Shown piece after piece: positions 1-47,540 of a stretch of 64,000 nt of DNA (the stretch's first letter is position 1; each line of letters begins with the position of its first letter). The position numbers and the translations under genes are program-made. Source of the stretch: Glycera tridactyla (lineage: Eukaryota); assembly GCA_965644265.1 (NCBI GenBank), contig OZ286469.1:62930001-62994000 (forward strand). Reading direction: 5' to 3'. The notes beneath the pieces are model-generated. The model made no database searches. It saw only the letters and a list, made by a program, of their open reading frames with translations, and was not told where the DNA came from.

Positions 1-289
1 TGGAAAATTCCCTAGTCTAGCAGAAGCAGCGGATTTAGCCAGTAAACACAGCAAGAGGGAGCTGAAAGAAGTGGTCAGCCCCACAAGATCACCACCCACA
101 CCACGAAGACAACAACAACCAGACAGGCCCAAAACACACACCAGCTTCAAAGACAAGCTGACAGCACCCGCCGCAACATCACAGCCAGCCCTTCATACAG
201 TACAGACTATCAGGTCCTGGACAATCATGCGCTGGTGTGTGCCCCAACACCACAGGATGGGCACGCCTGCCATGCAGGATTTCAATTGA
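1..289 (+). pseudogene. 3' part of LINE ORF1-derived fragment (partial unit U0)
   Basis: Translates to ...VSPTRSPPTPRRQQQPDRPKTHTSFKDKL as in other units; lacks both 21-bp ACAGGATCAGC.GC.TATGAC repeats (about -41 nt). Confidence 0.8.
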
Positions 290-312
290 CATCAGTTACA
301 AGTAAGCAAGAT

Positions 313-480
313 GATTACATTGCATTGTCAAAAGACAATTTGGCCAACATGAAAGATGTTTTCAGTATGTTACTAACAATTCTCCGCACACTGCAATGAT
401 ATGGGCATACAAGCTAATTTTTTTTGCATCTCAATCATTGCTGTTGGTGACTTGATGCAGTTATCACCAGTCAATATTCT
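313..480 (+). pseudogene. Decayed PIF1-family helicase fragment (present in the spacer of every unit)
   Basis: Reads YIALSKDNLANMKDVFSMLLTILRTLQ*YGHTS*FF(C)ISIIAVGDLMQLSPV; IIAVGDLxQLxPV is PIF1 motif III. Contains stops and a variable T7-T9 run. Confidence 0.7.
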
Positions 481-785
481 AATATATGTGATTTTGAGTA
501 AATTTCACTGAAACTCCAAAAAGAAGATCATGTACAAAACCTCATTCAATGGTCTGCAACATTTGATGTTCTGAATCAATATGGACAAATTATACATCAA
601 TCGATGCAAAATCTTGTCCTGCATTGATGTTCCAAATTTGGTGAAGATCCGTCAGAGTTGTGGAAGAATTTGACGAGGAATGGATATGAAGCTAGACGAA
701 ATCACTTCCTGGCTTCATTTTCGACTGCTGAAACAATCATGACCATCAGTTGCTTTCGCTCACGTCCGTGAGTGTGCCTTATATC

Positions 786-1511
786 ATGAAAGAAAAGGCT
801 CACTTGCCTATCGCTACCCAGACGTTGTCTGCAGTTACTATATCTTCGTCGTCGCAAACCAAGAGAGAACCTGTCGTCGTACAGTCCCCGGAGGTACTCA
901 TCATGAGCAGCTCCCATGTTGCCAGGATTCCCTCCAGTGCCCTGCAGGGTGCCACCAACGTGTCTCTAGCCGGTCGCGAGGGATATACTTGGGGTGATGC
1001 CCTAAAAGTGCTCCAGGGCAGGATGGAACCAGCCCGGGGGACCGTACCCCTCAGCGATCTACAGCAGTTAATACTTGATAGTGATGTGTGCGTGTTTGTC
1101 TACGGTTCTAACGATTTGGCCCGTAGATTCTTTGATGTGAAGCTGGGGGTGTGTCGAGGGCCTACCTCAGCTGAGGTTGTTGCAGATATGAAAGCCTTTC
1201 TATCTTATGTTCTCTACCTTCGAGTAAAGGCTGGTTTGCCTGTGCCACGTATCCACGTGTTGAGTGTTCTTGTGAGGCCAGATTGGGGACAAGAACTTGT
1301 GGATGCCGCGTGGAGGGTGAATGACGCTGTTTCAGCTCACCCTGACGTGGCATCTTTAATCATCCCTTTCTGGTTTCACCCGGAGTCCCACATCCGCCCT
1401 CCGACTGCACGAGGAAGTGTGGACAACAAGCATCTGCATCCCTATCTTTACAAAGAACTATTGAAGACTATAAAATGCGAGGTGAGGGGTCATGCTCCTG
1501 GTGACTGGTGA
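786..1511 (+). CDS. SGNH/GDSL-like hydrolase SGNH1, unit U1 (241 aa from ATG 786)
   Basis: Blocks: SSSH (G>S variant of GSSH), AGREG, YGSND, DNKH. Confidence 0.75.
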   Translation: MKEKAHLPIATQTLSAVTISSSSQTKREPVVVQSPEVLIMSSSHVARIPSSALQGATNVSLAGREGYTWGDALKVLQGRMEPARGTVPLSDLQQLILDSDVCVFVYGSNDLARRFFDVKLGVCRGPTSAEVVADMKAFLSYVLYLRVKAGLPVPRIHVLSVLVRPDWGQELVDAAWRVNDAVSAHPDVASLIIPFWFHPESHIRPPTARGSVDNKHLHPYLYKELLKTIKCEVRGHAPGDW

Positions 1512-3160: not shown

Positions 3161-3803
3161 CCAGCCCTGCATACAGTACAGACTATCAGGTCCTGGACAA
3201 TCATGCGCTGGTGTGTGCCCCAACACCACAGAATCAGCAGCTTATGACACAGGATCAGCGGCCTATGACACAGATGGGCACGCCTGCCATGCAGGATTTC
3301 AATTGACATCAGTTACAAGTAAGCAAGATGATTACATTGCATTGTCAAAAGACAATTTGGCCAACATGAAAGATGTTTTTAGTATGTGACTAACAATTCT
3401 CCGCACACTGCAATGATATGGGCATACAAGCTAATTTTTTTTTGCATCTCAATCATTGCTGTTGGTGACTTGATGCAGTTATCACCAGTCAATATTCTAA
3501 TATATGTGATTTTGAGTAAATTTCACTGAAACTCCAAAAAGAAGATCATGTACAAAACCTCATTCAATGGTCTGCAACATTTGATGTTCTGGATCAATAT
3601 GGACAAATTATACATCAATCGATGCAAAATCTCGTCCTGCATTGATGTTCCAAATTTGGTGAAGATCCTTCAGAGTTGTGGAAGAATTTGACGAGGAATG
3701 GATATGAAGCTAGACGAAATCACTTCCTGGCTTCATTTTCGACTGCTGAAACAATCATGACCATCAGTTGCTTTCGCTCACGTCCGTGAGTGTGCCTTAT
3801 ATC

Positions 3804-8074: not shown

Positions 8075-9181
8075 ATGGAGACACCTACAAACACACTCAC
8101 ACAACCACCACACACACCAACATACAGCAGTGTAGTAGCAACAGCAATCATGTTGCCAACCACACAGATGCTCCCAAACAAACCGCGCAGCAGACAGCTT
8201 AACCCTATCCCCACAGCAGAAGAGTTAGCAGCACATCAGAAACAGAATAGCAGACATCAGATCAAGATGCCATCTCCTAGGATCACAACAAAAACTGTGG
8301 AGAAAGCCAGCAACCCACCGATCAAGTATCTGTCCAACTATGACAGATACTACGAGCACCTCTACCTTCCAGAGAGGGCACCTAAAGTAGGGCAGGGAGA
8401 AGTCGAGATCGAAGCACTAGACTGCTTCTCTAGGAAGTACGGGCTTATCCCATCATCCTATGTGACCCAGATGGCGTCAGAAAAACAGCACATTGACAGG
8501 TCATCCAACAAACAGCATGTCCAGATCCACTGGGTAGAGGGACACTACATCACCTCACAACTCAAAAACAAGAAACTGAAGATCTGGGACTCTAGACCAA
8601 CCAAAAACATCATCCAGAGGCTCACCCCACAGATCAAGGCGCTCTATGAGGAGAGCCAATTCGACCTGGTGCAGCACAGAATAGTGCAGAACCAGAATAA
8701 CAGCACAGACTGTGGCCCCTTCGCAGCAGCCTTCGCCCAAATCCTGGTCATGACGAAGGCTGACTTGGGACAAATCGAGTTCCAGCAGGGCTCAATACGG
8801 GATAAATTCCAGGCCAACCTCAACACCCTGGAGTTGAAAATCAACGACATCCTTGACCAGGCTGCCTCAAATGAAGTCTTTGCCAGGCAGACCATTCTAG
8901 AAGAAGCAGCTGGAAAATTCCCTAGTCTAGCAGAAGCAGCGGATTTAGCCAGTAAACACAGCAAGAGGGAGCTGAAAGAAGTGGTCAGCCCCACAAGATC
9001 ACCACCCACACCACGAAGACAACAACAACCAGACAGGCCCAAAACACACACCAGCTTCAAAGACAAGCTGACAGCACCCGCCGCAACATCACAGCCAGCC
9101 CTGCATACAGTACAGACTATCAGGTCCTGGACAATCATGCGCTGGTGTGTGCCCCAACACCACAGGATCAGCAGCTTATGA
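8075..9181 (+). CDS. Open Ulp1/C48-like protease ORF (ORF1-derived, 368 aa from first ATG), U3
   Basis: QIHWVEGHYIT...IWDS...QNQNNSTDCGPFAAAFAQ intact; 30-nt in-frame deletion downstream of the catalytic Cys. Confidence 0.65.
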   Translation: METPTNTLTQPPHTPTYSSVVATAIMLPTTQMLPNKPRSRQLNPIPTAEELAAHQKQNSRHQIKMPSPRITTKTVEKASNPPIKYLSNYDRYYEHLYLPERAPKVGQGEVEIEALDCFSRKYGLIPSSYVTQMASEKQHIDRSSNKQHVQIHWVEGHYITSQLKNKKLKIWDSRPTKNIIQRLTPQIKALYEESQFDLVQHRIVQNQNNSTDCGPFAAAFAQILVMTKADLGQIEFQQGSIRDKFQANLNTLELKINDILDQAASNEVFARQTILEEAAGKFPSLAEAADLASKHSKRELKEVVSPTRSPPTPRRQQQPDRPKTHTSFKDKLTAPAATSQPALHTVQTIRSWTIMRWCVPQHHRISSL

Positions 9182-9736
9182 CACAGGATCAGCGGCCTAT
9201 GACACAGATGGGCACGCCTGCCATGCAGGATTTCAATTGACATCAGTTACGAGTAAGCAAGATGATTACATTGCATTGTCAAAAGACAATTTGGCCAACA
9301 TGAAAGATGTTTTTAGTATGTTACTAACAATTCTCCGCACACTGCAATGATATGGGCATACAAGCTAATTTTTTTTGCATCTCAATCATTGCTGTTGGTG
9401 ACTTGTTGCAGTTATCACCAGTCAATATTCTAATATATGTGATTTTGAGTAAATTTCACTGAAACTCCAAAAAGAAGATCATGTACAAAACCTCATTCAA
9501 TGGTCTGCAACATTTGATGTTCTGAATCAATATGGACAAATTATACATCAATCGATGCAAAATCTCGTCCTGCATTGATGTTCCAAATTTGGTGAAGATC
9601 CGTCAGAGTTGTGGAAGAATTTGACGAGGAATGGATATGAAGCTAGACGAAATCACTTCCTGGCTTCATTTTCGACTGCTGAAACAATCATGACCATCAG
9701 TTGCTTTCGCTCACGTCCGTGAGTGTGCCTTATATC

Positions 9737-11067: not shown

Positions 11068-12204
11068 ATGGAGACACCTACAAACACACTCACACAACCA
11101 CCACACACACCAACATACAGCAGTGTAGTAGCAACAGCAATCATGTCGCCAACCACACAGATGCTCCCAAACAAACCGCGCAGCAGACAGCTTAACCCTA
11201 TCCCCACAGCAGAAGAGTTAGCAGCACATCAGAAACAGAATAGCAGACATCAGATCAAGATGCCATCTCCTAGGATCACAACAAAAACTGTGGAGAAAGC
11301 CAGCAACCCACCGATCAAGTATCTGTCCAACTATGACAGATACTACGAGCACCTCTACCTTCCAGAGAGGGCACCTAAAGTAGGGCAGGGAGAAGTCGAG
11401 ATCGAAGCACTAGACTGCTTCTCTAGGAAGTACGGGCTTATCCCATCATCCTATGTGACCCAGATGGCGTCAGAAAAACAGCACATTGACAGGTCATCCA
11501 ACAAACAGCATGTCCAGATCCACTGGGTAGAGGGACACTACATCACCTCACAACTCAAAAACAAGAAACTGAAGATCTGGGACTCTAGACCAACCAAAAA
11601 CATCATCCAGAGGCTCACCCCACAGATCAAGGCGCTCTATGAGGAGAGCCAATTCGACCTGGTGCAGCACAGAATAGTGCAGAACCAGAATAACAGCACA
11701 GACTGTGGCCCCTTCGCAGCAGCCTTCGCCCAAATCCTGGTCATGACGAAGGCTGACTTGGGACAAATCGAGTTCCAGCAGGGCTCAATACGGGATAAAT
11801 TCCAGGCCAACCTCAACACCCTGGAGTCTCTGCCCTTCAAAACGAAGAGGAATCCGTTGAAAATCAACGACATCCTTGACCAGGCTGCCTCAAATGAAGT
11901 CTTTGCCAGGCAGACCATTCTAGAAGAAGCAGCTGGAAAATTCCCTAGTCTAGCAGAAGCAGCGGATTTAGCCAGTAAACACAGCAAGAGGGAGCTGAAA
12001 GAAGTGGTCAGCCACACAAGATCACCACCCACACCACGAAGACAACAACAACCAGACAGGCCCAAAACACACACCAGCTTCAAAGACAAGCTGACAGCAC
12101 CCGCTGCAACATCACAGCCAGTCCTGCATACAGTACAGACTATCAGGTCCTGGACAATCATGCGCTGGTGTGTGCCCCAACACCACAGGATCAGCAGCTT
12201 ATGA
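11068..12204 (+). CDS. Open Ulp1/C48-like protease ORF (ORF1-derived, 378 aa from first ATG), U4
   Basis: His codon 11536-11538, WDS Asp, Cys codon 11704-11706; ATG in ATCATGG context. Confidence 0.7.
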   Translation: METPTNTLTQPPHTPTYSSVVATAIMSPTTQMLPNKPRSRQLNPIPTAEELAAHQKQNSRHQIKMPSPRITTKTVEKASNPPIKYLSNYDRYYEHLYLPERAPKVGQGEVEIEALDCFSRKYGLIPSSYVTQMASEKQHIDRSSNKQHVQIHWVEGHYITSQLKNKKLKIWDSRPTKNIIQRLTPQIKALYEESQFDLVQHRIVQNQNNSTDCGPFAAAFAQILVMTKADLGQIEFQQGSIRDKFQANLNTLESLPFKTKRNPLKINDILDQAASNEVFARQTILEEAAGKFPSLAEAADLASKHSKRELKEVVSHTRSPPTPRRQQQPDRPKTHTSFKDKLTAPAATSQPVLHTVQTIRSWTIMRWCVPQHHRISSL

Positions 12205-12759
12205 CACAGGATCAGCGGCCTATGACACAGATGGGCACGCCTGCCATGCAGGATTTCAATTGACATCAGTTACAAGTAAGCAAGATGATTACATTGCATT
12301 GTCAAAAGACAATTTGGCCAACATGAAAGATGTTTTTAGTATGTTACTAACAATTCTCCGCACACTGCAATGATATGGGCATACAAGCTAATTTTTTTTG
12401 CATCTCAATCATTGCTGTTGGTGACTTGATGCAGTTATCACCAGTCAATATTCTAATATATGTGATTTTGAGTAAATTTCACTGAAACTCCAAAAAGAAG
12501 ATCATGTACAAAACCTCATTCAATGGTCTGCAACATTTGATGTTCTGAATCAATATTGACAAATTATACATCAATCGATGCAAAATCTCGTCCTGCATTG
12601 ATGTTCCAAATTTGGTGAAGATCCGTCAGAGTTGTGGAAGAATTTGACGAGGAATGGATATGAAGCTAGACGAAATCACTTCCTGGCTTCATTTTCGACT
12701 GCTGAAACAATCATGACCATCAGTTGCTTTCGCTCACGTCCGTGAATTTGCCTTATATC

Positions 12760-14074: not shown

Positions 14075-15222
14075 CCTAGGAAACACCATCATGGAGACAC
14101 CTACAAACACACTCACACAACCACCACACACACCAACATACAGCAGTGTAGTAGCAACAGCAATCATGTCGCCAACCACACAGATGCTCCCAAACAAACC
14201 GCGCAGCAGACAGCTTAACCCTATCCCCACAGCAGAAGAGTTAGCAGCACATCAGAAACAGAATAGCAGACATCAGATCAAGATGCCATCTCCTAGGATC
14301 ACAACAAAAACTGTGAAGAAAGCCAGCAACCCATCGATCAAGTATCTGTCCAACTATGACAGATACTACGAGCCCCTCTACCTTCTAGAGAGGGCACCTG
14401 AAGTAGGGCAGGGAGAAGTCGAGATCGAAGCACTAGACTGCTTCTCTAGGAAGTACGGGCTTATCCCATCATCCTATGTGACCCAGATGGCGTCAGAAAA
14501 ACAGCACATTGACAGGTCATCCAACAAACAGCATGTCCAGATCCACTGGGTGAGGGACACCATCACCTCACAACTCAAAAACAAGAAACTGAAGATTTGG
14601 GACTAGACCAACCAAAAACATCATCCAGAGGCTCACCCCACAGATCAAGGCGCTCTATGAGGAGAGCCAATTCGACCTGGTGCAGCACAAAATAGTGCAG
14701 AACCAGAATAACAGCACAGACTGTGGCCCCTTCGCAGCAGCCTTCGCCCAAATCCTGGTCATGACGAAGGCTGACTTGGGACAAATTGAGTTCCAGCAGG
14801 GCTCAATACGGGAAAAATTCCAGGCCAACCTCAACACCCTGGAGTCTCTGCCCTTCAAAACGAAGAGGAATCCGTTGAAAATCAACGACATCCTTGACCA
14901 GGCTGCCTCAAATGAAGTCTTTGCCAGGCAGACCATTCTAGAAGAAGCAGCTGGAAAATTCCCTAGTCTAGCAGAAGCAGCGGATTTAGCCAGTAAACAC
15001 AGCAAGAGGGAGCTGAAAGAAGTGGTCAGCCCCACAAGATCACCACCCACACCACGAAGACAACAACAACCAGACAGGCCCAAAACACACACCAGCTTCA
15101 AAGACAAGCTGACAGCACCCGCCGCAACATCACAGCCAGCCCTGCATACAGTACAGACTATCAGGTCCTGGATAATCATGCGCTGGTGTGTGCCCCAACA
15201 CCACAGGATCAGCAGCTTATGA
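14049..15222 (+). pseudogene. ORF1/Ulp1-like fragment, disrupted, U5
   Basis: Catalytic His lost (WVRDTIT) and CT-deletion stop at 14606. Confidence 0.8.
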
Positions 15223-15777
15223 CACAGGATCAGCGGCCCATGACACAGATGGGCACGCCTGCCATGCAGGATTTCAATTGACATCAGTTACAAGTAAGCA
15301 AGATGATTACATTGCATTTTCAAAAGACAATTTGGCCAACATGAAAGATGTTTTTAGTATGTTACTAACAATTCTCCGCACACTGCAATGATATGGGCAT
15401 ACAAGCTAATTTTTTTTGCATCTCAATCATTGCTGTTGGTGACTTGATGCAGTTATCACCAGTCAATATTCTAATATATGTGATTTTGAGTAAATTTCAC
15501 TGAAACTCCAAAAAGAAGATCATGTACAAAACCTCATTCAATGGTCTGCAACATTTGATGTTCTGAATCAATATGGACAAATTATACATCAATCGATGCA
15601 AAATCTCGTCCTGCATTGATGTTCCAAATTTGGTGAAGATCCGTCAGAGTTGTGGAAGAATTTGACGAGGAATGGATATGAAGCTAGACAAAATCACTTC
15701 CTGGCTTCATTTTCGACTGCTGAAACAATCATGACCATCAGTTGCTTTCGCTCACGTCCGTGAGTGTGCCTTATATC

Positions 15778-17092: not shown

Positions 17093-18240
17093 CCTAGGAA
17101 ACACCATCATGGAGACACCTACAAACACACTCACACAACCACCACACACACCAACATACAGCAGTGTAGTAGCAACAGCAATCATGTCGCCAACCACACA
17201 GATGCTCCCAAACAAACCGCGCAGCAGACAGCTTAACCCTATCCCCACAGCAGAAGAGTTAGCAGCACATCAGAAACAGAATAGCAGACATCAGATCAAG
17301 ATGCCATCTCCTAGGATCACAACAAAAACTGTGAAGAAAGCCAGCAACCCATCGATCAAGTATCTGTCCAACTATGACAGATACTACGAGCCCCTCTACC
17401 TTCTAGAGAGGGCACCTGAAGTAGGGCAGGGAGAAGTCGAGATCGAAGCACTAGACTGCTTCTCTAGGAAGTACGGGCTTATCCCATCATCCTATGTGAC
17501 CCAGATGGCGTCAGAAAAACAGCACATTGACAGGTCATCCAACAAACAGCATGTCCAGATCCACTGGGTGAGGGACACCATCACCTCACAACTCAAAAAC
17601 AAGAAACTGAAGATTCGGGACTAGACCAACCAAAAACATCATCCAGAGGCTCACCCCACAGATCAAGGCGCTCTATGAGGAGAGCCAATTCGACCTGGTG
17701 CAGCACAGAATAGTGCAGAACCAGAATAACAGCACAGACTGTGGCCCCTTCGCGGCAGCCTTCGCCCAAATCCTGGTCATGACGAAGGCTGACTTGGGAC
17801 AAATTGAGTTCCAGCAGGGCTCAATACGGGAAAAATTCCAGGCCAACCTCAACACCCTGGAGTCTCTGCCCTTCAAAACGAAGAGGAATCCGTTGAAAAT
17901 CAACGACATCCTTGACCAGGCTGCCTCAAATGAAGTCTTTGCCAGGCAGACCATTCTAGAAGAAGCAGCTGGAAAATTCCCTAGTCTAGCAGAAGCAGCG
18001 GATTTAGCCAGTAAACACAGCAAGAGGGAGCTGAAAGAAGTGGTCAGCCCCACAAGATCACCACCCACACCACGAAGACAACAACAACCAGACAGGCCCA
18101 AAACACACACCAGCTTCAAAGACAAGCTGACAGCACCCGCCGCAACATCACAGCCAGCCCTGCATACAGTACAGACTATCAGGTCCTGGATAATCATGCG
18201 CTGGTGTGTGCCCCAACACCACAGGATCAGCAGCTTATGA
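17067..18240 (+). pseudogene. ORF1/Ulp1-like fragment, disrupted, U6
   Basis: Same lesions as U5; stop at 17624. Confidence 0.8.
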
Positions 18241-18795
18241 CACAGGATCAGCGGCCCATGACACAGATGGGCACGCCTGCCATGCAGGATTTCAATTGAC
18301 ATCAGTTACAAGTAAGCAAGATGATCACATTGCATTGTCAAAAGACAATTTGGCCAACATGAAAGATGTTTTTAGTATGTTACTAACAATTCTCCGCACA
18401 CTGCAATGATATGGGCATACAAGCTAATTTTTTTTGCATCTCAATCATTGCTGTTGGTGACTTGATGCAGTTATCACCAGTCAATATTCTAATATATGTG
18501 ATTTTGAGTAAATTTCACTGAAACTCCAAAAAGAAGATCATGTACAAAACCTCATTCAATGGTCTGCAACATTTGATGTTCTGAATCAATATGGACAAAT
18601 TATACATCAATCGATGCAAAATCTCGTCCTGCATTGATGTTCCAAATTTGGTGAAGATCCGTCAGAGTTGTGGAAGAATTTGACGAGGAATGGATATGAA
18701 GCTAGACGAAATCACTTCCTGGCTTCATTTTCGACTGCTGAAACAATCATGACCATCAGTTGCTTTCGCTCACGTCCGTGAGTGTGCCTTATATC

Positions 18796-21170: not shown

Positions 21171-21813
21171 CCAGCCCTGCATACAGTACAGACTATCAGG
21201 TCCTGGACAATCATGCGCTGGTGTGTGCCCCAACACCACAGGATCAGCAGCTTATGACACAGGATCAGCGGCCTATGACACAGATGGGCACGCCTGCCAT
21301 GCAGGATTTCAATTGACATCAGTTACAAGTAAGCAAGATGATTACATTGCATTGTCAAAAGACAATTTGGCCAACATGAAAGATGTTTTTAGTATGTGAC
21401 TAACAATTCTCCGCACACTGCAATGATATGGGCATACAAGCAAATTTTTTTTTGCATCTCAATCATTGCTGTTGGTGACTTGATGCAGTTATCACCAGTC
21501 AATATTCTAATATATGTGATTTTGAGTAAATTTCACTGAAACTCCAAAAAGAAGATCATGTACAAAACCTCATTCAATGGTCTGCAACATTTGATGTTCT
21601 GAATCAATATGGACAAATTATACATCAATCGATGCAAAATCTCGTCCTGCATTGATGTTCCGAATTTGGTGAAGATCCTTCAGAGTTGTGGAAGAATTTG
21701 ACGAGGAATGGATATGAAGCTAGACGAAATCACTTCCTGGCTTCATTTTCGACTGCTGAAACAATCATGACCATCAGTTGCTTTCGCTCACGTCCGTGAG
21801 CGTGCCTTATATC

Positions 21814-23120: not shown

Positions 23121-24271
23121 CCTAGGAAACACCATCATGGAGACACCTACAAACACACTCACACAACCACCACACACACCAACAAACAGCAGTGTAGTAG
23201 CAACAGCAATCATGTCGCCAACCACACAGATGCTCCCAAACAAACCGCGCAGCAGACAGCTCAACCCTATCCCCACAGCAGAAGAGTTAGCAGCACATCA
23301 GAAACAGAATAGCAGACATCAGATCAAGATGCCATCTCCTAGGATCACAACAAAAACTGTGGAGAAAGCCAGCAACCCACCGATCAAGTATCTGTCCAAC
23401 TATGACAGATACTACGAGCACCTCTACCTTCCAGAGGGCACCTGAAGTAGGGCAGGGAGAAGTCGAGATCGAAGCACTAGACTGCTTCTCTAGGAAGTAC
23501 GGGCTTATCCCATCATCCTATGTGATCCAGATGGTGTCAGACAAACAGCACATTGACAGGTCATCCAACAAACAGCATGTCCAGATCCACTGGGTAGAGG
23601 GACACTACATCACCTCACAACTCAAAAACAAGAAACTGAAGATCTGGGACTCTAGACCAACCAAAAACATCATCCAGAGGCTCACCCCACAGATCAAGGC
23701 GCTCTATGAGGAGAGCCAATTCGACCTGGTGCAGCACAGAATAGTGCAGAACCAGAATAACAGCACAGACTGTGGCCCCTTCGCAGCAGCCTTCGCCCAA
23801 ATCCTGGTCATGACGAAGGCTGACTTGGGACAAATTGAGTTCCAGCAGGGCTCAATACGGGAAAAATTCCAGGCCAACCTCAACACCCTGGAGTCTCTGC
23901 CCTTCAAAACGAAGAGGAATCCGTTGAAAATCAACGATATCCTTGACCAGGCTGCCTCAAATGAAGTCTTTGCCAGGCAGACCATTCTAGAAGAAGCAGC
24001 TGGAAAATTCCCTAGTCTAGCAGAAGCAGCGGATTTAGCCAGTAAACACAGCAAGAGGGAGCTGAAAGAAGTGGTCAGCCCCACAAGATCACCACCCACA
24101 CCACGAAGACAACAACAACCAGACAGGCCCAAAACACACACCAGCTTCAAAGACAAGCTGACAGCACCCGCCGCAACATCACAGCCAGCCCTGCATACAG
24201 TACAGACTATCAGGTCCTGGACAATCATGCGCTGGTGTGTGCCCCAACACCACAGGATCAGCAGCTTATGA
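23095..24271 (+). pseudogene. ORF1/Ulp1-like fragment with one frameshift upstream of the protease core, U8
   Basis: 1-nt deletion near 23437; the catalytic core stays open in 23402-24271. Confidence 0.75.
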
Positions 24272-24826
24272 CACAGGATCAGCGGCCTATGACACAGATG
24301 GGCACGCCTGCCATGCAGGATTTCAATTGACATCAGTTACAAGTAAGCAAGATGATTACATTGCATTGTCAAAAGACAATTTGGCCAACATGAAAGATGT
24401 TTTTAGTATGTTACTAACAATTCTCCGCACACTGCAATGATATGGGCATACAAGCAAATTTTTTTTGCATCTCAATCATTGCTGTTGGTGACTTGATGCA
24501 GTTATCACCAGTCAATATTCTAATATATGTGATTTTGAGTAAATTTCACTGAAACTCCAAAAAGAAGATCATGTACAAAACCTCATTCAATGGTCTGCAA
24601 CATTTGAAGTTCTCAATCAATATGGACAAATTATACATCAATCGATGCAAAATCTCGTCCTGCATTGATGTTCCAAATTTGATGAAGATCCTTCAGAGTT
24701 GTGGAAGAATTTGACGAGGAATGGATATGAAGCTAGACGAAATCACTTCCTGGCTTCATTTTCGACTGCTGAAACAATCATGACCATCAGTTGCTTTCGC
24801 TCACGTCCGTGAGTGTGCCTTATATC

Positions 24827-26135: not shown

Positions 26136-27287
26136 CCTAGGAAACACCATCATGGAGACACCTACAAACACACTCACACAACCACCACACACACCAACAT
26201 ACAGCAGTGTAGTAGCAACAGCAATCATGTCGCCAACCACACAGATGCTCCCAAACAAACCGCGCAGCAGACAGCTTAACCCTATCCCCACAGCAGAAGA
26301 GTTAGCAGCACATCAGAAACAGAATAGCAGACATCAGATCAAGATGCCATCTCCTAGGATCACAACAAAAACTGTGGAGAAAGCCAGCAACCCACCGATC
26401 AAGTATCTGTCCAACTATGACAGATACTACGAGCACCTCTACCTTCCAGAGAGGGCACCTGAAGTAGGGCAGGGAGAAGTCGAGATCGAAGCACTAGACT
26501 GCTTCTCTAGGAAGTACGGGCTTATCCCATCATCCTATGTGACCCAGATGGCGTCAGAAAAACAGCACATTGACAGGTCATCCAACAAACAGCATGTCCA
26601 GATCCACTGGGTAGAGGGACACTACATCACCTCACAACTCAAAAACAAGAAACTGAAGATCTGGGACTAGACCAACCAAAAACATCATCCAGGGGCTCAC
26701 CCCACAGATCAAGGCGCTCTATGAGGAGAGCCAATTCGACCTGGTGCAGCACAGAATAGTGCAGAACCAGAATAACAGCACAGACTGTGGCCCCTTCGCA
26801 GCAGCCTTCGCCCAAAATCCTGGTCATGACGAAGGCTGACTTGGGACAAATCAAGTTCCAGCAGGGCTCAATACGGGAAAAATTCCAGGCCAACCTCAAC
26901 ACCCTGGAGTCTCTGCCCTTCAAAACGAAGAGGAATCCGTTGAAAATCAACGACATCCTTGACCAGGCTGCCTCAAATGAAGTCTTTGCCAGGCAGACCA
27001 TTCTAGAAGAAGCAGCTGGAAAATTCCCTGGTCTAGCAGAAGCAGCGGATTTAGCCAGTAAACACAGCAAGAGGGAGCTGAAAGGAGTGGTCAGCCCCAC
27101 AAGATCACCACCCACACCACGAAGACAACAACAACCAGACAGGCCCAAAACACACACCAGCTTCAAAGACAAGCTGACAGCACCCGCCGCAACATCACAG
27201 CCAGCCCTGCATACAGTACAGACTATCAGGTCCTGGACAATCATGCGCTGGTGTGTGCCCCAACACCACAAGATCAGCAGCTTATGA
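26110..27287 (+). pseudogene. ORF1/Ulp1-like fragment, disrupted, U9
   Basis: CT-deletion stop at 26670; extra 1-nt insertion near 26815. Confidence 0.8.
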
Positions 27288-27841
27288 CACAGGATCAGCG
27301 GCCTATGACACAGATGGGCACGCCTGCCACGCAGGATTTCAATTGACATCAGTTAAAAGTAAGCAAGATGATTACATTGCATTGTCAAAAGACAATTTGG
27401 CCAACATGAAAGATGTTTTCAGTATGTTACTAACAATTCTCCGCACACTGCAATGATATGGGCATACAAGCTAATTTTTTTGCATCTCAGTCATTGCTGT
27501 TGGTGACTTGATGCAGTTATCACCAGTCAATATTCTAATATATGTGATTTTGAGTAAATTTCACTGAAACTCCAAAAAGAAGATCATGTACAAAACCTCA
27601 TTCACTGGTCTGCAACATTTGAAGTTCTCAATCAATATGGACAAATTATACATCAATCGATGCAAAATCTCGTCCTGCATTGATGTTCCAAATTTGGTGA
27701 AGATCCTTCAGAGTTGTGGAAGAATTTGACGAGGAATGGATATGAAGCTAGACGAAATCACTTCCTGGCTTCATTTTCGACTGCTGAAACAATCATGACC
27801 ATCAGTTGCTTTCGCTCACGTCCGTGAGTGTGCCTTATATC

Positions 27842-29150: not shown

Positions 29151-30301
29151 CCTAGGAAACACCATCATGCGGACACCTACAAACACACTCACACAACCAC
29201 CACACACACCAACATACAGCAGTGTAGTAGCAACAGCAATCATGTCGCCAACCACACAGATGCTCCCAAACAAACCGGGCAGCAGACAGCTTAACCCTAT
29301 CCCCACAGCAGAAGAGTTAGCAGCACATCAGAAACAGAATAGCAGACATCAGATCAAGATGCCATCTCCTAGGATCACAACAAAAACTGTGGAGAAAGCC
29401 AGCGACCCACCGATCAAGTATCTGTCCAACTATGACAGATACTATGAGCACCTCTACCTTCCAGAGAGGGCACCTGAAGTAGGGCAGGGAGAAGTCGAGA
29501 TCGAAGCACGACTGCTTCTCTAGGAAGTACGGGCTTATCCCATCATCCTATGTGACCCAGATGGCGTCAGACAAACAGCACATTGACAGGTCATCCAACA
29601 AACAGCATGTCCAGATCCACTGGGTAGAGGGACACTACATCACCTCATAACTCAAAAACAAGAAACTGAAGATCTGGGACTCTAGACCAACCAAAAACAT
29701 CATCCAGAGGCTCACCCCACAGATCAAGCTGCTCTATGAGGAGAGCCAATTCGACCTGGTGCAGCACAGAATAGTGCAGAACCAGAATAACAGCACAGAC
29801 TGTGGCCCCTTCGCAGCAGCCTTCGCCCAAATCCTGGTCATGACGAAGGCTGACTAGGGACAAATTGAGTTCCAGCAGGGCTCAATACGGGAAAAATTCC
29901 AGGCCAACCTCAACACCCTGGAGTCTCTGCCCTTCAAAACGAAGAGGAATCCGTTGAAAATCAACGACATCCTTGACCAGGCTGCCTCAAATGAAGTCTT
30001 TGCCAGGCAGACCATTCTAGAAGAAGCAGCTGGAAAATTCCCTAGTCTAGCAATAGCAGCGGATTTAGCCAGTAAACACAGCAAGAGGGAGCTGAAAGAA
30101 GTGGTCAGCCCCACAAGATCACCACCCACACCACGAAGACAACAACAACCAGACAGGCCCAAAACACACACCAGCTTCAAAGACAAGCTGACAGCACCCG
30201 CCGCAACATCACAGCCAGCCCTGCATACAGTACAGACTATCAGGTCCTGGACAATCATGCGCTGGTGTGTGCCCCAACACCACAAGATCAGCAGCTTATG
30301 A
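29125..30301 (+). pseudogene. ORF1/Ulp1-like fragment, disrupted, U10
   Basis: 2-nt deletion (GAAGCAC^GACTG) plus nonsense changes; shared with U11. Confidence 0.8.
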
Positions 30302-30386
30302 CACAGGATCAGCGGCCTATGACACAGATGGGCACGCCTGCCATGCAGGATTTCAATTGACATCAGTCACAAGTAAGCAAGATGAT

Positions 30387-30542
30387 TACATTGCATTGTC
30401 AAAAGACAATTTGGCCAACATGAAAGATGTTTTCAGTATGTTACTAACAATTCTCCGCACACTGCAATGATATGGGCATACAAGCTAATTTTTTTGCATC
30501 TCAATCATTGCTGTTGGTGACTTGATGCAGTTATCACCAGTC
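30387..30542 (+). pseudogene. PIF1-helicase relic, in-frame (T7) version
   Basis: With seven T the whole YIALSKDNL...SIIAVGDLMQLSPV segment is in one frame with two stops. Confidence 0.72.
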
Positions 30543-31600: not shown

Positions 31601-32170
31601 ATGTCCCTTTTGTATGTTCATAAATATACTGCCTCGAGCGCTGCTGCTACTATATCTACCAAGACTGCTGCGGTCTCTGCGACTATTTCTACACAGACTG
31701 CTACATCGAGCGCCTCTGCTACTACTTCTACCCAGACTGCTGCGTCCTCTACGACTATTTCGACACAGACGTCCGACGTGAAGGTTCAACCTGTATCAAT
31801 ACAGACTTTTGCAGTGCCATCCCTATCTTCGTCCTTCTCTTCTTCAGGTTCAAAAGTTCTCATCATGGGTAGCTCCTACGTTGCCCGGATTCCTGCTTCA
31901 TTGCTAGAGGGAGCAACTAACGTGACTTTGGCTGGGCGAGAGGGCTTCACTTGGTCTGAAGCCCTACAAGTTTTGCAGGGAAGAAAGGAGCCTTCGCGTG
32001 GGGACTTGTCTGCTGCTGCAATCCGAGACTTGATTCTAACAAGTACTGTTAGAGAAACTGTCACCCAGCAAGCAGGACAAAAACCCATCTCAGGAAATCC
32101 AATCAGTTTCCAGCCCAGCACTGGACGATCTGGGATACACTCTATTGAACATAGAGAGCCTAGACACTAG
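31601..32170 (+). pseudogene. SGNH2 partial, U11
   Basis: As U10. Confidence 0.75.
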
Positions 32171-33321
32171 CCTAGGAAACACCATCATGCAGACACCTAC
32201 AAACACACTCACACAACCACCACACACACCAACATACAGCAGTGTAGTAGCAACAGCAATCATGTCGCCAACCACACAGATGCTCCCAAACAAACCGGGC
32301 AGCAGACAGCTTAACCCTATCCCCACAGCAGAAGAGTTAGCAGCACATCAGAAACAGAATAGCAGACATCAGATCAAGATGCCATCTCCTAGGATCACAA
32401 CAAAAACTGTGGAGAAAGCCAGCAACCCACCGATCAAGTATCTGTCCAACTATGACAGATACTATGAGCACCTCTACCTTCCAGAGAGGGCACCTGAAGT
32501 AGGGCAGGGAGAAGTCGAGATCGAAGCACGACTGCTTCTCTAGGAAGTACGGGCTTATCCCATCATCCTATGTGACCCAGATGGCGTCAGACAAACAGCA
32601 CATTGACAGGTCATCCAACAAACAGCATGTCCAGATCCACTGGGTAGAGGGACACTACATCACCTCATAACTCAAAAACAAGAAACTGAAGATCTGGGAC
32701 TCTAGACCAACCAAAAACATCATCCAGAGGCTCACCCCACAGATCAAGCTGCTCTATGAGGAGAGCCAATTCGACCTGGTGCAGCACAGAATAGTGCAGA
32801 ACCAGAATAACAGCACAGACTGTGGCCCCTTCGCAGCAGCCTTCGCCCAAATCCTGGTCATGACGAAGGCTGACTAGGGACAAATTGAGTTCCAGCAGGG
32901 CTCAATACGGGAAAAATTCCAGGCCAACCTCAACACCCTGGAGTCTCTGCCCTTCAAAACGAAGAGGAATCCGTTGAAAATCAACGACATCCTTGACCAG
33001 GCTGCCTCAAATGAAGTCTTTGCCAGGCAGACCATTCTAGAAGAAGCAGCTGGAAAATTCCCTAGTCTAGCAGAAGCAGCGGATTTAGCCAGTAAACACA
33101 GCAAGAGGGAGCTGAAAGAAGTGGTCAGCCCCACAAGATCACCACCCACACCACGAAGACAACAACAACCAGACAGGCCCAAAACACACACCAGCTTCAA
33201 AGACAAGCTGACAGCACCCGCCGCAACATCACAGCCAGCCCTGCATACAGTACAGACTATCAGGTCCTGGACAATCATGCGCTGGTGTGTGCCCCAACAC
33301 CACAAGATCAGCAGCTTATGA
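32145..33321 (+). pseudogene. ORF1/Ulp1-like fragment, disrupted, U11
   Basis: Same lesions as U10. Confidence 0.8.
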
Positions 33322-33875
33322 CACAGGATCAGCGGCCTATGACACAGATGGGCACGCCTGCCATGCAGGATTTCAATTGACATCAGTAACAAGTAAGCAA
33401 GATGATTACATTGCATTGTCAAAAGACAATTTGGCCAACATGAAAGATGTTTTCAGTATGTTACTAACAATTCTCCGCACACTGCAATGATATGGGCATA
33501 CAAGCTAATTTTTTTGCATCTCAATCATTGCTGTTGGTGACTTGATGCAGTTATCACCAGTCAATATTCTAATATATGTGATTTTGAGTAAATTTCACTG
33601 AAACTCCAAAAAGAAGATCATGTACAAAACCTCATTCAATGGTCTGCAACATTTGATGTTCTCAATCAATATGGACAAATTATACATCAATCGATGCAAA
33701 ATCTCGTCCTGCATTGATGTTCCAAATTTGGTGAAGATCCGTCAGAGTTGTGGAAGAATTTGACGAGGAATGGATATGAAGCTAGACGAAATCAGTTCCT
33801 GGCTTCATTTTCGACTGCTGAAACAATCATGACCATCAGTTGCTTTCGCTCACGTCCGTGAGTGTGCCTTATATC

Positions 33876-35190: not shown

Positions 35191-36338
35191 CCTAGAAAAC
35201 ACCATCATGGAGACACCTACAAACACACTCACACAACCACCACACACACCAACATACAGCAGTGTAGTAGCAACAGCAATCATGTCGCCAACCACACAGA
35301 TGCTCCCAAACAAACCGGGCAGCAGACAGCTTAACCCTATCCCCACAGCAGAAGAGTTAGCAGCACATCAGAAACAGAATAGCAGACATCAGATCAAGAT
35401 GCCATCTCCTAGGATCACAACAAAAACTGTGGAGAAAGCCAGCAACCCACCGATCAAGTATCTGTCCAACTATGACAGATACTACGAGCACCTCTACCTT
35501 CCAGAGAGGGCACCTGAAGTAGGGCAGGGAGAAGTCGAGATCGAAGCACTAGACTGCTTCTCTAGGAAGTACGGGCTTATCCCATCATCCTATGTAACCC
35601 AGATGGCGTCAGAAAAACAGCACATTGACAGGTCATCCAACGAACAGCATGTCCAGATCCACTGGGTAGAGGGACACTACATCACCTCACAACTCAAAAA
35701 CAAGAAACTGAAGATCTGGGACTAGACCAACCAAAAACATCATCCAGAGGCTCACCCCACAGATCAAGGCGCTCTATGAGGAGAGCCAATTCGACCTGGT
35801 GCAGCACAGAATAGTGCAGAACCAGAATAACAGCACAGACTGTGGCCCCTTCGCAGCAGCCTTCGCCCAAATCCTGGTCATGACGAAGGCTGACTTGGGA
35901 CAAATCGAGTTCCAGCAGGGCTCAATACGGGAAAAATTCCAGGCCAACCTCAACACCCTGGAGTCTCTGCCCTTCAAAACGAAGAGGAATCCGTTGAAAA
36001 TCAACGACATCCTTGACCAGGCTGCCTCAAATGAAGTCTTTGCCAGGCAGACCATTCTAGAAGAAGCAGCTGGAAAATTCCCTAGTCTAGCAATAGCAGC
36101 GGATTTAGCCAGTAAACACAGCAAGAGGGAGCTGAAAGAAGTGGTCAGCCCCACAAGATCACCACCCACACCACGAAGACAACAACAACCAGACAGGCCC
36201 AAAACACACACCAGCTTCAAAGACAAGCTGACAGCACCCGCCGCAACATCACAGCCAGCCCTGCATACAGTACAGACTATCAGGTCCTGGACAATCATGC
36301 GCTGGTGTGTGCCCCAACACCACAGGATCAGCAGCTAA
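35165..36338 (+). pseudogene. ORF1/Ulp1-like fragment, disrupted, U12
   Basis: CT-deletion stop at 35725. Confidence 0.8.
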
Positions 36339-37907
36339 TGACACAGGATCAGCGGCCTATGACACAGATGGGCACGCCTGCCATGCAGGATTTCAATTGA
36401 CATCAGTTACAAGTAAGCAAGATGATTACATTGCATTGTCAAAAGACAATTTGGCCAACATGAAAGATGTTTTCAGTATGTTACTAACAATTCTCCGCAC
36501 ACTGCAATGATATGGGCATACAAGCTAATTTTTTTTGCATCTCAATCATTGCTGTTGGTGACTTGATGCAGTTATCACCAGTCAATATTCTAATATATGT
36601 GATTTTGAGTAAATTTCACTGAAACTCCAAAAAGAAGATCATGTACAAAACCTCATTCACTGGTCTGCAACATTTGATGTTCTGAATCAATATGGACAAA
36701 TTATACATCAATCGATGCAAAATCTCGTCCTGCATTGATGTTCCAAATTTGGTGAAGATCCGTCAGAGTTGTGGAGGAATTTGACGAGGAATGGATATGA
36801 AGCTAGACGAAATCAGTTCCTGGCTTTAATTTTGACTGCTGAAACAATCATGACCATCAGTTGCTTTCGCTCACGTCCGTGAGCGTGCCTTATATCATGA
36901 AAGAAAAGGCCCACTTGCCACTTGCTCACCGACCTCGGAAGCAGCAACATCTCCTCTCTCCAGCTCTCCAGCAGCCTCAACAACCTCGGACTACTCTCAC
37001 TATCATCCTACTTCAGCTTAGCAGCCTTAGCTATTCACCATCACTCTCACAGCAGCCAAGTGTTTCTACGAAACAGGTAGTGGTGAATTTTACATTTAGA
37101 TTATCATTATTGTTGTTTTTGCCAGGGTTTTTGTCAGGATTAGCTTAGAACATCGTTTGTTTACATCTGTATTTTTGGAAACTTAGCTCTCAACCGCCGG
37201 AATCTATCGTCGTGTCGGAAAACTAGTTTGAATCATAGGATCATCTTGAAAATCGCAAAGCACCTAGCTTCACGGACTATCTATAAGCCCTAGAATTTTC
37301 GAGCGAATAGTACTAGAATTACGGAAACTACGGGACTTTTAGCGACACGGAAATAGCACATCTTGATCTGACTCTCATCTAGCATCATCACTCTCACTTT
37401 CGGCTACGATATCTCCGCGGCATTTATATCCAACTTTCTGGTACATTACATGCTTATTTAGAATCGTTATAGCTTTGTATACATTGATTTTGGATTAGTT
37501 TGGATTGCTAGTTTGGAAATTATCGCGCATAAACCGGGAAAACTTATCACCGCGTCGGAAAATTACTTAAAATCGCTCGATCGCCACGAAAATCGCTCAG
37601 CATCTAGGTATACCGATTATCTATACGCTCTGAAATTATTGAATAGCTAGCTATAAAATTGACGGAATTACGGCATCTTTTGTGACGCGGAATTTGTAAT
37701 TTATTATCGGAAAGCTAAGTAGGTCAACGCGGTGACGGTACCGAGCGACTTTACGCGTCACTGAACACGAGAGCGTGAGTACATCACTGAGCGCGGTCAT
37801 CTCATCAACACCTCTCACTCATCAACACCTCACTTCATCAACACCTCTCCATCAGCATCATCATCTCATCACTCTCATTTCTCTCATCATCACATCACAA
37901 ACTCAAC

Positions 37908-47391: not shown

Positions 47392-47540
47392 AATGGACGA
47401 TTCAGACGTAGCAGAGTTGTACACAAAGTAGTAGTAGTATTAGACACTGGAAGTTGGAAGTCTTCACAGGGTATGACTGAATCAGGGAAAAACAACCAGT
47501 TTTATGCCCACTAGCTAGCGCCCATTGGCTGGAGCCGCTC

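What the first reader, a model, noticed from the sequence alone, without database searches (positions are those of the whole stretch)
313..800. The 'spacer' of the unit is a hidden PIF1-helicase relic
Seen: the AT-rich spacer translates (best in T7 units, e.g. 30387-30542) to YIALSKDNLANMKDVFSMLLTIL-RTLQ*YGHTS*FFCISIIAVGDLMQLSPV, and a QKED tetrapeptide follows in another frame. Established: PIF1/Helitron helicases have Y.PLS.D.L..L....L...IIDEISM...RL..I.G....FGG.SII.VGDL.QL.PV and later MRQK.D. Inference: the Walker B (DEISM) stretch was deleted. The ORF track misses this. It ties the array to a Helitron/Helentron-like ancestor; SGNH and cysteine-protease passengers have, as I recall, been reported in Helentrons (needs a literature check).
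Basis: partly seen in the sequence, partly recalled or inferred. Interest (0 to 1): 0.7.

Follow-up and report, generated by a model that had tools for sequence, protein, structure and literature searches.

The report
Dead Helentron helicase fragment in array
Each 3-kb repeat unit carries a dead ~330-base fragment of a rolling-circle transposon (Helentron) helicase gene, next to a copy-like relative of the histone H1 promoter; the fragment is a genuine but ordinary transposon fossil and does not show that a Helentron built the array.

Summary
The quoted translation is exactly there, and it is a real PIF1-family helicase relic.

**Evidence for the relic**
- A frameshift-aware alignment to this genome's closest helicase scores 144, against 31.8 ± 4.4 for shuffled DNA.
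- A search of 1.84 billion proteins gives one non-repeat hit, a PIF1 helicase (P0004, E 4.6e-5). It is 53% identical to the relic.

**Closest relatives**
- They are Helentron transposases: Rep, PIF1 helicase and a C-terminal AP endonuclease.

**Three details need correcting**
- Walker B is degenerate ("DVFSM"), not deleted.
- Nothing after motif III, "QKED" included, exceeds chance.

**The rest of the "spacer"**
- Window 488-784 is about 71% identical to the promoter of tandem histone H1 genes and ends at the TATA box.

**The "passengers"**
- The protease part is the N-terminus of a LINE ORF1.
- The SGNH genes belong to a neighbouring esterase array.

**Origin of the array**
- All 16 copies share the same lesions, so the helicase died before amplification.
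- I found no Helentron termini, Rep or endonuclease in the unit.

Verdict: a passive fossil inside a mosaic unit, of modest interest. The scan had noted the PIF1 relic before, on this same stretch.

The parts
181..472 (+). Helentron-type PIF1 helicase relic, unit 1. This is the 41-bp-deletion variant: frame 1 runs 181-396, then frame 2 runs 404-472.
   Evidence: tblastn against L048 gives summed E 1e-10. Against P0004 the score is 160 with 51/97 identical.
232..282 (+). Motif Ia remnant, LVCAPT..GHACHAGF. Units with the 41-bp insert read ..TGSAAYDTDGHACHAGF.
   Evidence: It aligns with LVCAPTGAAAYNISGHTLHSAY of L048 and LVCAPTGSAAYQISGHTLHAAF of P0004.
355..369 (+). Degenerate Walker B (motif II) remnant, DVFSM.
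   Evidence: It aligns with DEISM (L048) and DEVSM (P0004). The catalytic Glu is replaced by Val, and 4-5 residues are lost on each side.
397..417 (+). Two in-frame stops (TGA 397-399, TAA 415-417), followed by a poly-T run (418-425) whose length (7-9 T) sets the frame of motif III.
   Evidence: Both stops are present in all 16 copies.
443..472 (+). Motif III, VGDLMQLSPV. This is the last detectable helicase residue.
   Evidence: 16/27 identical to the C32 Helentron (FGNVSVIAVGDLYQLPPV) and 14/27 to L048. Nothing downstream exceeds chance.
488..786 (+). Homologue of the histone H1 proximal promoter, ending in a TATA-like box (TTATATCA, 779-786) at the start of the SGNH1 ORF. Every unit has one.
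   Evidence: About 71% identity over ~300 bp to the DNA just upstream of H1 ORFs in the H1 tandem arrays, in the same orientation, with homology ending at the TATA box. The H1 genes are confirmed by the RF00032 stem-loop.
3175..3490 (+). Relic, unit 2
   Evidence: score 163, 53/97 identical to P0004
6188..6502 (+). Relic, unit 3
   Evidence: score 169
9091..9423 (+). Relic, unit 4
   Evidence: score 173
12114..12446 (+). Relic, unit 5
   Evidence: score 171
15132..15464 (+). Relic, unit 6
   Evidence: score 162
18150..18482 (+). Relic, unit 7
   Evidence: score 161
21185..21500 (+). Relic, unit 8
   Evidence: score 165
24181..24513 (+). Relic, unit 9
   Evidence: score 171
27197..27528 (+). 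Relic, unit 10 (T7 type, single frame with 2 stops)
   Evidence: score 168
30211..30542 (+). Relic, unit 11 (T7 type). This is the reference copy used for the statistics.
33231..33562 (+). Relic, unit 12 (T7 type)
   Evidence: score 167
36251..36583 (+). Relic in the terminal partial unit. The array ends at about 36926, next to a LINE 5' end.
32040..33126 (+). Context: the part of the unit homologous to residues ~5-376 of a LINE ORF1, including the Ulp1-like Q.Q.NSTDCGP motif. It ends about 85-105 bp before the next relic (33231; about 146 bp in unit 1).
   Evidence: tblastx gives 54-57% identity to window 37920-39027 and 50666-51769. blastp gives 6e-38 and 9e-47.

Best explanation
Window 181-472, and the equivalent stretch in each of the 16 repeat copies, is a pseudogenised ~330-bp fragment of the helicase domain of a Helentron transposase. 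A Helentron is a rolling-circle transposon of the HLE2 group, whose RepHel protein combines Rep, a PIF1 helicase and an AP endonuclease.

**What the fragment retains and lacks.**
- It retains motif Ia, a degenerate Walker B (DVFSM) and motif III (VGDLMQLSPV).
- It lacks Walker A, everything after motif III, the Rep domain and the endonuclease.
- It carries two stops, one or two frameshifts, and about 16-22 missing residues.
- It therefore cannot encode a helicase.

**Timing.** All copies share these lesions, so the fragment was dead before the 3.0-kb unit was amplified. It was copied passively as part of a mosaic unit.

**The mosaic unit, in order.**
1. The helicase relic.
2. A ~300-bp homologue of the histone H1 promoter ending in a TATA box. 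This is inferred to be the working promoter of the unit.
3. One and a half SGNH-esterase ORFs.
4. The N-terminal third of a LINE ORF1 with a Ulp1-like protease.

**How the array formed.** Amplification was most likely by unequal crossing-over or replication slippage of this mosaic, beside an older 3.4-kb SGNH array, and not by rolling-circle transposition.

**Shown:** the identity and extent of the relic, its nearest kin, the shared lesions, and the mosaic origin of the unit. **Inferred:** passivity of the relic, promoter function, and the amplification mechanism.
For: **The relic is real.**
- Score 144 against 31.8 ± 4.4 for shuffles.
- An HMM built from this genome's RepHel helicases finds one frame of the unit at E 5e-12 and nothing else in the unit.
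- The only single-stretch hit among 1.84e9 proteins is the PIF1 helicase P0004, with 54/102 identical residues.

**Its kin are Helentrons.**
- The C32 ORF of 2837 aa has DUF6570, Helitron_like_N, PIF1, Pif1_2B and Exo_endo_phos.
- L048/L052 align with it through the endonuclease.
- P0004's contig is collinear with RepHel residues 1759-2382.
- The ranking is Helentron above Helitron-like families.

**It was dead before amplification.** The stops and gaps are the same in all 16 copies.

**It is passive.** Diversity is flat across the unit, with π 0.0125 in the relic against 0.0097-0.0125 elsewhere.

**The unit is a mosaic.**

**Nothing else in the unit is Helentron-derived.** No other Helentron sequence appears at DNA or protein level. 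No further helicase or Rep signal appears in the left flank.

**The unit is not dispersed.** The relic DNA occurs only in this array.

**A separate public DNA dataset** shows the same tandem junction.
Against: - No RNA data exist, so transcription of the relic, or a role for it as a UTR or spacer, cannot be excluded.
- The 5' end of the relic coincides within ~10 bp with the left boundary of the array. A purely passive model has to treat this as a coincidence or as an unresolved breakpoint history.
- There is a published precedent for SGNH genes captured by Helitrons (PMC4021074).
The absence of termini in the unit therefore rests only on a generic inverted-repeat scan.
- Pfam's generic PIF1 model does not see the short pieces on their own.
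Confidence: 0.8

Rival explanations
1. The unit descends from a non-autonomous Helentron that kept a piece of its helicase and captured host and TE fragments: an H1 promoter, an SGNH esterase and a LINE ORF1 protease. The tandem array was then produced by rolling-circle replication that failed to terminate.
For: - The relic is Helentron-derived.
- Its 5' end coincides with the array's left boundary.
- Helitron-like elements capture genes and promoters and can form tandem arrays (PMC12001565, PMC4778049).
- SGNH 'texim' genes lie next to corrupted Helitron coding regions in fish (PMC4021074).
- Peptidase_C48 and OTU are listed among HLE cargo (PMC11417382, PMC4067079).
Against: - Only ~11% of the monomer is Helentron-derived, and only at protein level. 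Published Helitron-derived arrays have monomers that essentially are the element (PMC12001565).
- There are no 12-16-nt terminal inverted repeats, no T-rich junction and no 3' hairpin at the unit junction.
- The array's right end is out of phase with its left end: it ends after the promoter segment, at a LINE 5' end.
- The unit is not dispersed in the genome.
- The protease part is closest to LINE ORF1s in the same window.
- The SGNH genes belong to a neighbouring relic-free array.
Confidence: 0.12
2. The fragment is a piece of the host's own cellular PIF1 gene, as a duplicated exon or processed pseudogene, and not of a transposon.
For: It belongs to the PIF1 family, and its relative L048 matches cellular PIF1 structures at 5e-27.
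Against: - The best matches are RepHel proteins with Rep and endonuclease domains, at 45-53% identity.
- The relic pieces find no cellular PIF1 in the PDB at E up to 10.
- The only hit in the 1.84e9-protein library is of the L048 Helentron family.
- Every PIF1-bearing ORF examined in this genome also carries Helitron_like_N.
Confidence: 0.03
3. The relic has been co-opted. It would serve as a 3' UTR or terminator for the upstream protease ORF, as an upstream regulatory spacer for the H1-like promoter, or as a short translated peptide.
For: - It sits between the end of the LINE-ORF1-like ORF and the promoter-like segment in every unit.
- Some copies have open frames of 92-117 codons across it.
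Against: - It is no better conserved than the rest of the unit.
- Indels of 41 bp and poly-T length changes are tolerated among copies.
- The open frames differ from copy to copy.
- No RNA evidence is available.
Confidence: 0.05

Closest known systems
Helentron (HLE2 subgroup b) RepHel transposase, helicase domain
   Same: The relic aligns collinearly with motif Ia, motif II and motif III of Helentron helicases from this genome (L048 family, C32 element) and with P0004, at 42-53% identity. These relatives show the defining architecture of DUF6570, Rep, PIF1 and a C-terminal AP endonuclease (PMC4067079; PMC11417382).
   Different: Only about 100 codons survive, with stops and frameshifts. Walker A, motifs IV-VI, the 2B domain, Rep, the endonuclease and the termini are all missing. 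There is no nucleotide-level similarity to any Helentron I hold.
texim (SGNH hydrolase) genes associated with Helitron coding regions in teleost fish (Tomaszkiewicz et al. 2014, PMC4021074)
   Same: In both cases a multicopy SGNH-type esterase gene related to LINE (CR1) esterases lies within a few kb of a corrupted rolling-circle-transposon coding region.
   Different: - Here the remnant is a 330-bp Helentron (HLE2) helicase piece, not a near-complete Helitron ORF.
- The genes are in a 16-copy head-to-tail array with a LINE ORF1 fragment and an H1-like promoter.
- The neighbouring, older SGNH array has no relic.
- Homology of these SGNH ORFs to texim was not tested. A word-indexed protein search found nothing.
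- The paper reports no such association outside fish.
Helitron-derived tandem arrays and Helentron-carried satellite repeats (PMC12001565, PMC7492417, PMC4067079)
   Same: A tandem array contains rolling-circle-transposon sequence.
   Different: - In those cases the monomer is the element or its internal repeat (at least 80% identity over at least 85% of the element) and lies between element termini.
- Here the transposon part is a minor, ancient, protein-level remnant without termini.
- The monomer is 3 kb of gene-like sequence.
Replication-dependent histone H1 gene promoter of the same genome
   Same: Window 488-784 is about 71% identical over ~300 bp to the region directly upstream of H1 ORFs. 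It has the same orientation and ends at the TATA box.
   Different: - It drives, if anything, an SGNH esterase ORF.
- No histone 3' stem-loop follows in the unit.
- Its function is untested.

Membership tests
PIF1-like SF1B helicase (PF05970) as a functional member | Walker A / motif I (G.GG.GKS) | tested here: not met
   It is absent from the units. The apparent CVSSQLYRVI in the left flank is at chance level (22 against 21 ± 3.6; 117 of 300 shuffles reach it).
PIF1-like SF1B helicase (PF05970) as a functional member | Motif Ia (..APTG.AA..I.G.T.HS) | tested here: met
   LVCAPT..TGSAAYDTDGHACHAGF aligns with L048 and P0004. It is disrupted by a frameshift or a 41-bp indel.
PIF1-like SF1B helicase (PF05970) as a functional member | Walker B / motif II (DE.SM) | tested here: inconclusive
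   DVFSM aligns with DEISM/DEVSM, but the catalytic Glu is lost and flanking residues are deleted. The exact gap placement differs between the two alignments.
PIF1-like SF1B helicase (PF05970) as a functional member | Motif III (GD..QL.PV) | tested here: met
   VGDLMQLSPV occurs once per unit.
PIF1-like SF1B helicase (PF05970) as a functional member | Motifs IV-VI and the 2B domain; an uninterrupted reading frame | tested here: not met
   There is no signal after motif III. Every copy has two stops and/or 1-2 frameshifts. Pfam finds nothing in the pieces.
Helentron (HLE2) element | Helicase sequence closer to Helentron RepHel than to other PIF1-family proteins | tested here: met
   Scores are 167 (P0004), 144 (L048), 89 (C32) and 65-69 (Helitron-like family). 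There is no PDB PIF1 hit.
Helentron (HLE2) element | Rep (HUH) domain, DUF6570 and C-terminal AP endonuclease in the same element | tested here: not met
   These are present in the relatives. They are absent from the unit and from the array's left flank.
Helentron (HLE2) element | Short terminal inverted repeats, T-T insertion site and a 3' stem-loop | tested here: inconclusive
   The generic inverted-repeat scan shows none at the unit junction. The junction sequence is not T-rich. The family-specific termini could not be obtained.
Helitron-derived tandem array (rolling-circle origin) | Monomer at least 80% identical to the element and covering at least 85% of it (criterion of PMC12001565) | tested here: not met
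   There is no nucleotide match to the held Helentrons, and only ~330 of 3020 bp are related at protein level.
texim-Helitron type association | SGNH hydrolase gene adjacent to a (corrupted) rolling-circle transposase coding region | tested here: met
   SGNH-like blocks (GSSH, G, GSND, DNKH) appear in the ORFs, with only a weak GDSL lead from the Atlas. The relic lies ~330 bp upstream of SGNH1 and ~1.9 kb downstream of it in the next unit.
texim-Helitron type association | The SGNH gene is orthologous to texim and was mobilised together with the transposon | not tested
   No texim sequence was at hand and the protein word search was blank. The unit is not dispersed, which argues against mobilisation.
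Histone H1 promoter homologue | Sequence homology to the H1 5' flank up to the TATA box, in the same orientation relative to the downstream ORF | tested here: met
   H1 identity confirmed by ORF and RF00032
Histone H1 promoter homologue | Promoter activity | not testable with these tools
   No RNA run holds the stretch.

The most novel reading that the evidence does not exclude
The 3-kb unit is what is left of a Helentron-mediated capture event, an invertebrate counterpart of the fish texim-Helitron association. In this reading, a defective Helentron that kept a helicase stub picked up a histone H1 promoter, a LINE-type esterase and a LINE ORF1 protease. This created a new promoter-gene chimera, and rolling-circle re-initiation seeded the tandem array. 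The coincidence of the relic's 5' end with the array's left boundary would then mark the element's end.
Probability: 0.1. Interest if true: 0.6.

Novelty: new member of a known kind. Interest (0 to 1): 0.3.

Why it matters
On its own the relic is an ordinary transposon fossil, and this genome holds well over a hundred PIF1-bearing Helitron or Helentron sequences. It matters in three ways.

- **As a marker.** It shows that the array's monomer is a mosaic assembled from at least four unrelated sources before amplification. It also gives a datable, neutral landmark for reconstructing how a gene-bearing macrosatellite arose.
- **As a correction.** It is a relative of the histone H1 promoter placed in front of an esterase gene. 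That gives a concrete and testable hypothesis for how the amplified genes are expressed.
- **As a possible parallel.** A published fish case links SGNH genes with Helitrons. A second, independent association in an invertebrate would be of some interest if capture could be shown, but present evidence does not show it.

Tried and rejected
- **Pfam on the stop-free pieces** (30, 34, 55 and 30 aa): no family even at E 10. The pieces are too short and degenerate for the generic model.
- **phmmer of the 55-aa piece against PDB sequences:** nothing.
- **QKED and downstream sequence as motif IV:** at chance level.
- **Walker A, Rep or more helicase in the unique left flank:** at chance level.
- **The relic as a continuation of the LINE ORF1.** The C32 helicase gave a weak 26% hit at window 40126-40398 (E 5e-5), but that hit lacks the helicase motifs. 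The LINE ORFs score at chance against the relic DNA (52 and 43 against 43 ± 6). Rejected.
- **Four of the five hits in the 1.84e9-protein search** are repeat-summed artefacts in cadherin or MucBP-type repeat proteins. Disregarded.
- **Helentron-style termini:** none seen with a generic inverted-repeat scan.
- **Expression:** the only public run holding the unit is low-coverage DNA contigs.
- **Naming the SGNH family:** the word-indexed protein search was blank, the PDB sequence search was blank, and the Atlas gave only a weak GDSL-lipase lead.
I did not try another route.
Full report
**Setting.** The window is G000:C29:62,930,001-62,994,000 of a 2.04-Gb eukaryotic assembly. Its first ~36.9 kb is a head-to-tail array of a ~3,017-bp unit. 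One low-coverage public DNA run holds the unit, with a contig that bridges unit end to unit start, so the tandem junction appears in a separate public dataset.

**Observation.** In unit 1 the same peptide is split over two frames because a poly-T run has 8 T instead of 7. The span 313-800 has 36.9% GC, against 50% for the rest of the unit.

**Is it a PIF1 relic?**
- Pfam's generic PIF1 model and PDB sequences do not see the short stop-free pieces on their own.
- In the whole 2-Gb genome, the five best non-self matches of the 34-aa motif-III piece all fall inside PF05970-positive stretches.
- tblastn of genomic PIF1-family ORFs against one unit gives two collinear segments, 181-372 in frame 1 and 392-472 in frame 2, with summed E 1e-10 for the closest ORF, L048.
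- My frameshift-aware protein-to-DNA alignment scores 144, against 31.8 ± 4.4 (maximum 44) for dinucleotide-preserving shuffles.
- An HMM built from six RepHel helicase segments of this genome finds the T7 unit in one frame at E 5e-12, and nothing else in the unit.
- An unbiased phmmer search of the 72-aa open relic frame (window 181-396) against 1.84 billion representative proteins returned five hits. Four are repeat-summed artefacts in cadherin or MucBP-type proteins.
- The only single-stretch hit, P0004 (E 4.6e-5), is a PIF1 helicase (PF05970, 6e-30). P0004 aligns to the relic with score 167 and 54/102 identical residues.

The relic is therefore real.

**Extent and anatomy.** The alignment covers helicase residues from just after Walker A to motif III.
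- Motif Ia reads LVCAPT..TGSAAYDTDGHACHAGF, against LVCAPTGSAAYQISGHTLHAAF.
- The KQDDYI..LS...LANMK segment follows.
- DVFSM lies opposite the Walker B DEISM/DEVSM.
- LLTILRTL lies opposite LLTVHRRL.
- FFCISIIAVGDLMQLSPV lies opposite FGGISILAVGDLLQLPPV.

The relic thus begins at 181, not 313. Walker B is degenerate rather than deleted, with the catalytic Glu lost and 4-5 residues missing on either side. After motif III nothing exceeds chance: the score is 26 against 27.6 ± 3.9, and 43 of 60 shuffles reach it. The 'QKED' motif is therefore unsupported.

Every copy needs two stops and/or one or two frameshifts, and lacks 16-22 helicase residues. The stops and gaps are identical in all 16 copies. 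The copies differ only by a 41-bp indel made of two 21-bp repeats inside motif Ia, by poly-T length, and by scattered substitutions. The helicase was therefore dead before the unit was amplified. Diversity among units is flat, with π 0.0125 in the relic against 0.0097-0.0125 in the other segments, so nothing marks the relic as specially constrained.

**What kind of PIF1?**
- The 2,837-aa ORF at C32:43.36 Mb carries DUF6570, Helitron_like_N, PIF1, Pif1_2B and a C-terminal Exo_endo_phos domain.
  - A C-terminal AP endonuclease defines Helentrons (PMC4067079).
  - DUF6570 marks the HLE2 group (PMC11417382).
- The closest genomic relatives, L048 and L052, align with this protein through the endonuclease region, with 35% identity over 743 aa to residue 2822.
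  - They have a 96%-identical sibling with a 2,418-aa open frame at C17:54.86 Mb.
- P0004's metagenome contig is collinear with RepHel residues 1759-2382.
- L048 is a genuine PIF1-family helicase. It matches PDB PIF1 at 5e-27 and also matches the bat Helitron transposase Helraiser.
- Ranked against the relic, the Helentron families (167, 144, 89) beat the ~1,900-aa Helitron-like family (65-69).
- All PIF1-bearing ORFs I examined also carry a Rep domain.

A host PIF1 origin is therefore unlikely, although I did not single out the host gene among the 127 PF05970 hits.

**The rest of the 'spacer'.** Window 488-784 matches, at about 71% over ~300 bp, two other tandem arrays (C30, and C29:62.6 Mb). 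Those arrays encode histone H1. Each unit has a 208-codon open frame reading MSDSAAPAKKAVKATKK..., followed by a histone 3' stem-loop (RF00032).

The shared segment lies directly upstream of the H1 ORF, in the same orientation as it lies upstream of SGNH1. The homology stops at the TATA box: H1 has GTGTGCCGTAAATAGG and the unit has GTGTGCCTTATATCA at 772-786. The H1 arrays contain no PIF1-like sequence.

**The 'passengers'.**
- The 3' ~1.1 kb of the unit is 50-58% identical at protein level to residues ~5-376 of the ORF1 of LINEs lying in the same window (37.9 kb and 50.65 kb).
  - This includes the Q.Q.NSTDCGP motif typical of Ulp1/C48 proteases.
  - The homology ends ~146 bp before the relic in unit 1.
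- SGNH1 is 60% identical to a stand-alone ORF at 46,393-47,424 on the minus strand.
- SGNH1 is 59% identical to the gene of an older ~3.4-kb array that abuts the left edge and has no relic.
- Pfam recognises none of these ORFs, so the SGNH and Ulp1 labels rest on motif blocks plus a weak Atlas lead.
- Earlier notes of this scan, which are unchecked AI notes, report a confirmed esterase fold for the 3.4-kb array and LINEs with esterase genes in this genome.
- The LINE ORFs do not explain the relic, since they score at chance against it.

**Does the relic tie the array to a Helentron?** Only weakly. The evidence against:
- No nucleotide similarity, and no other protein similarity, links the unit to the Helentrons I hold.
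- The unit has no Rep, no endonuclease and no Helentron-style terminal repeats or hairpin at its junction.
- The relic DNA is found nowhere else in the genome.
- The array's two ends are out of phase. It starts at the relic and ends after the promoter segment, at a LINE 5' end.
- Published Helitron-derived arrays have monomers that essentially are the element (PMC12001565).

One fact does not fit a purely passive reading. The relic's 5' end coincides within ~10 bp with the array's left boundary, yet the unique flank holds no further helicase sequence.

- An SGNH gene (texim) lies next to often-corrupted Helitron coding regions in fish, and the authors found no such link in invertebrates (PMC4021074).
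- OTU proteases and RPA occur in Helentrons (PMC4067079).
- Peptidase_C48 is listed among domains captured by Helitron-like elements, while SGNH is not mentioned (PMC11417382).

**Verdict.** The relic is a genuine, dead Helentron helicase fragment, and its identification is a good catch. It is nonetheless an ordinary transposon fossil, carried passively in a mosaic unit made of relic, H1-like promoter, SGNH esterase ORFs and a LINE ORF1 fragment. It does not show that a Helentron built or carried the array. The more useful by-product is the H1-promoter homologue placed in front of the esterase gene.

**Limits.**
- No RNA data were available.
- The host PIF1 gene was not compared directly.

Noticed in passing
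window 488-786 (and each unit); L049:940-1243; L050:1152-1455: The 3' half of the 'spacer' is about 71% identical to the proximal promoter of tandemly repeated histone H1 genes. The homology ends exactly at the TATA box, and the segment sits directly upstream of the SGNH1 ORF. It is a likely promoter of the amplified esterase gene. The TATA-like box overlaps the first in-frame ATG (786), so the real start codon may lie further downstream (next in-frame ATG at 903).
   Followed up: partly
window ~36910, window ~49659, L050 (reverse strand) ~position 1138: Three copies of one LINE family share the same 5' end. Two of them lie 15-25 bp downstream of an H1-type TATA box. One follows the last promoter copy of this array, and the other follows a genuine H1 promoter at the edge of the H1 array 270 kb away. 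The start of the LINE 5' UTR is alignable to the H1 5' UTR. This is unexplained.
   Followed up: partly
G000 C29:62,850,771-62,921,245 (left of the window; L051:1-6246): An older tandem array of ~3.4-kb units, about 20 of them, abuts the left edge of the 3.0-kb array. Each unit has a ~404-codon SGNH ORF that is 59% identical to SGNH1. It has no PIF1 relic and no H1-like promoter.
   Followed up: partly
window 30296-30337 (T7 unit); absent at window ~256 in unit 1: A 41-bp indel made of two 21-bp direct repeats (GGATCAGCRGCYTATGACACA) lies inside helicase motif Ia. One repeat encodes the ancestral GSAAYDT. Three of the 16 copies, including the leftmost, lack both repeats.
   Followed up: yes
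window 40126-40398 (+), inside the 1172-codon LINE ORF: There is a weak similarity (26% over 91 aa, E 5e-5 in a 27-kb search) to the helicase segment of the C32 Helentron. It lacks the Walker B and GD..QL motifs and is probably spurious.
   Followed up: partly
window 60859-61545 (-): The AP endonuclease of the LINE at 58,690-61,608 matches the C-terminal endonuclease of the Helentron RepHel (23% over 240 aa, E 2e-10). This is similarity between two AP-type endonuclease domains.
   Followed up: no
L051:6057-6158 (about 90 bp left of the array edge): A ~100-bp dispersed repeat with many copies at 77-80% identity across the genome sits just outside the array's left boundary. Its identity is unknown, and I could not test whether it is a Helentron-related end.
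   Followed up: no
G000 C29:62,605,490-62,678,681: The H1 array on the same contig has irregular spacing (2.5 kb, ~3.03 kb, 5.4 kb and 11.5 kb), so it contains units other than plain H1 repeats.
   Followed up: no
L052:4093-6825: In the L048/L052 Helentron copies the RepHel frame is interrupted by a ~2.7-kb insertion just around Walker A. The two loci on C4 (130.02 and 134.17 Mb) are 99% identical over 5 kb, which indicates a segmental duplication.
   Followed up: no
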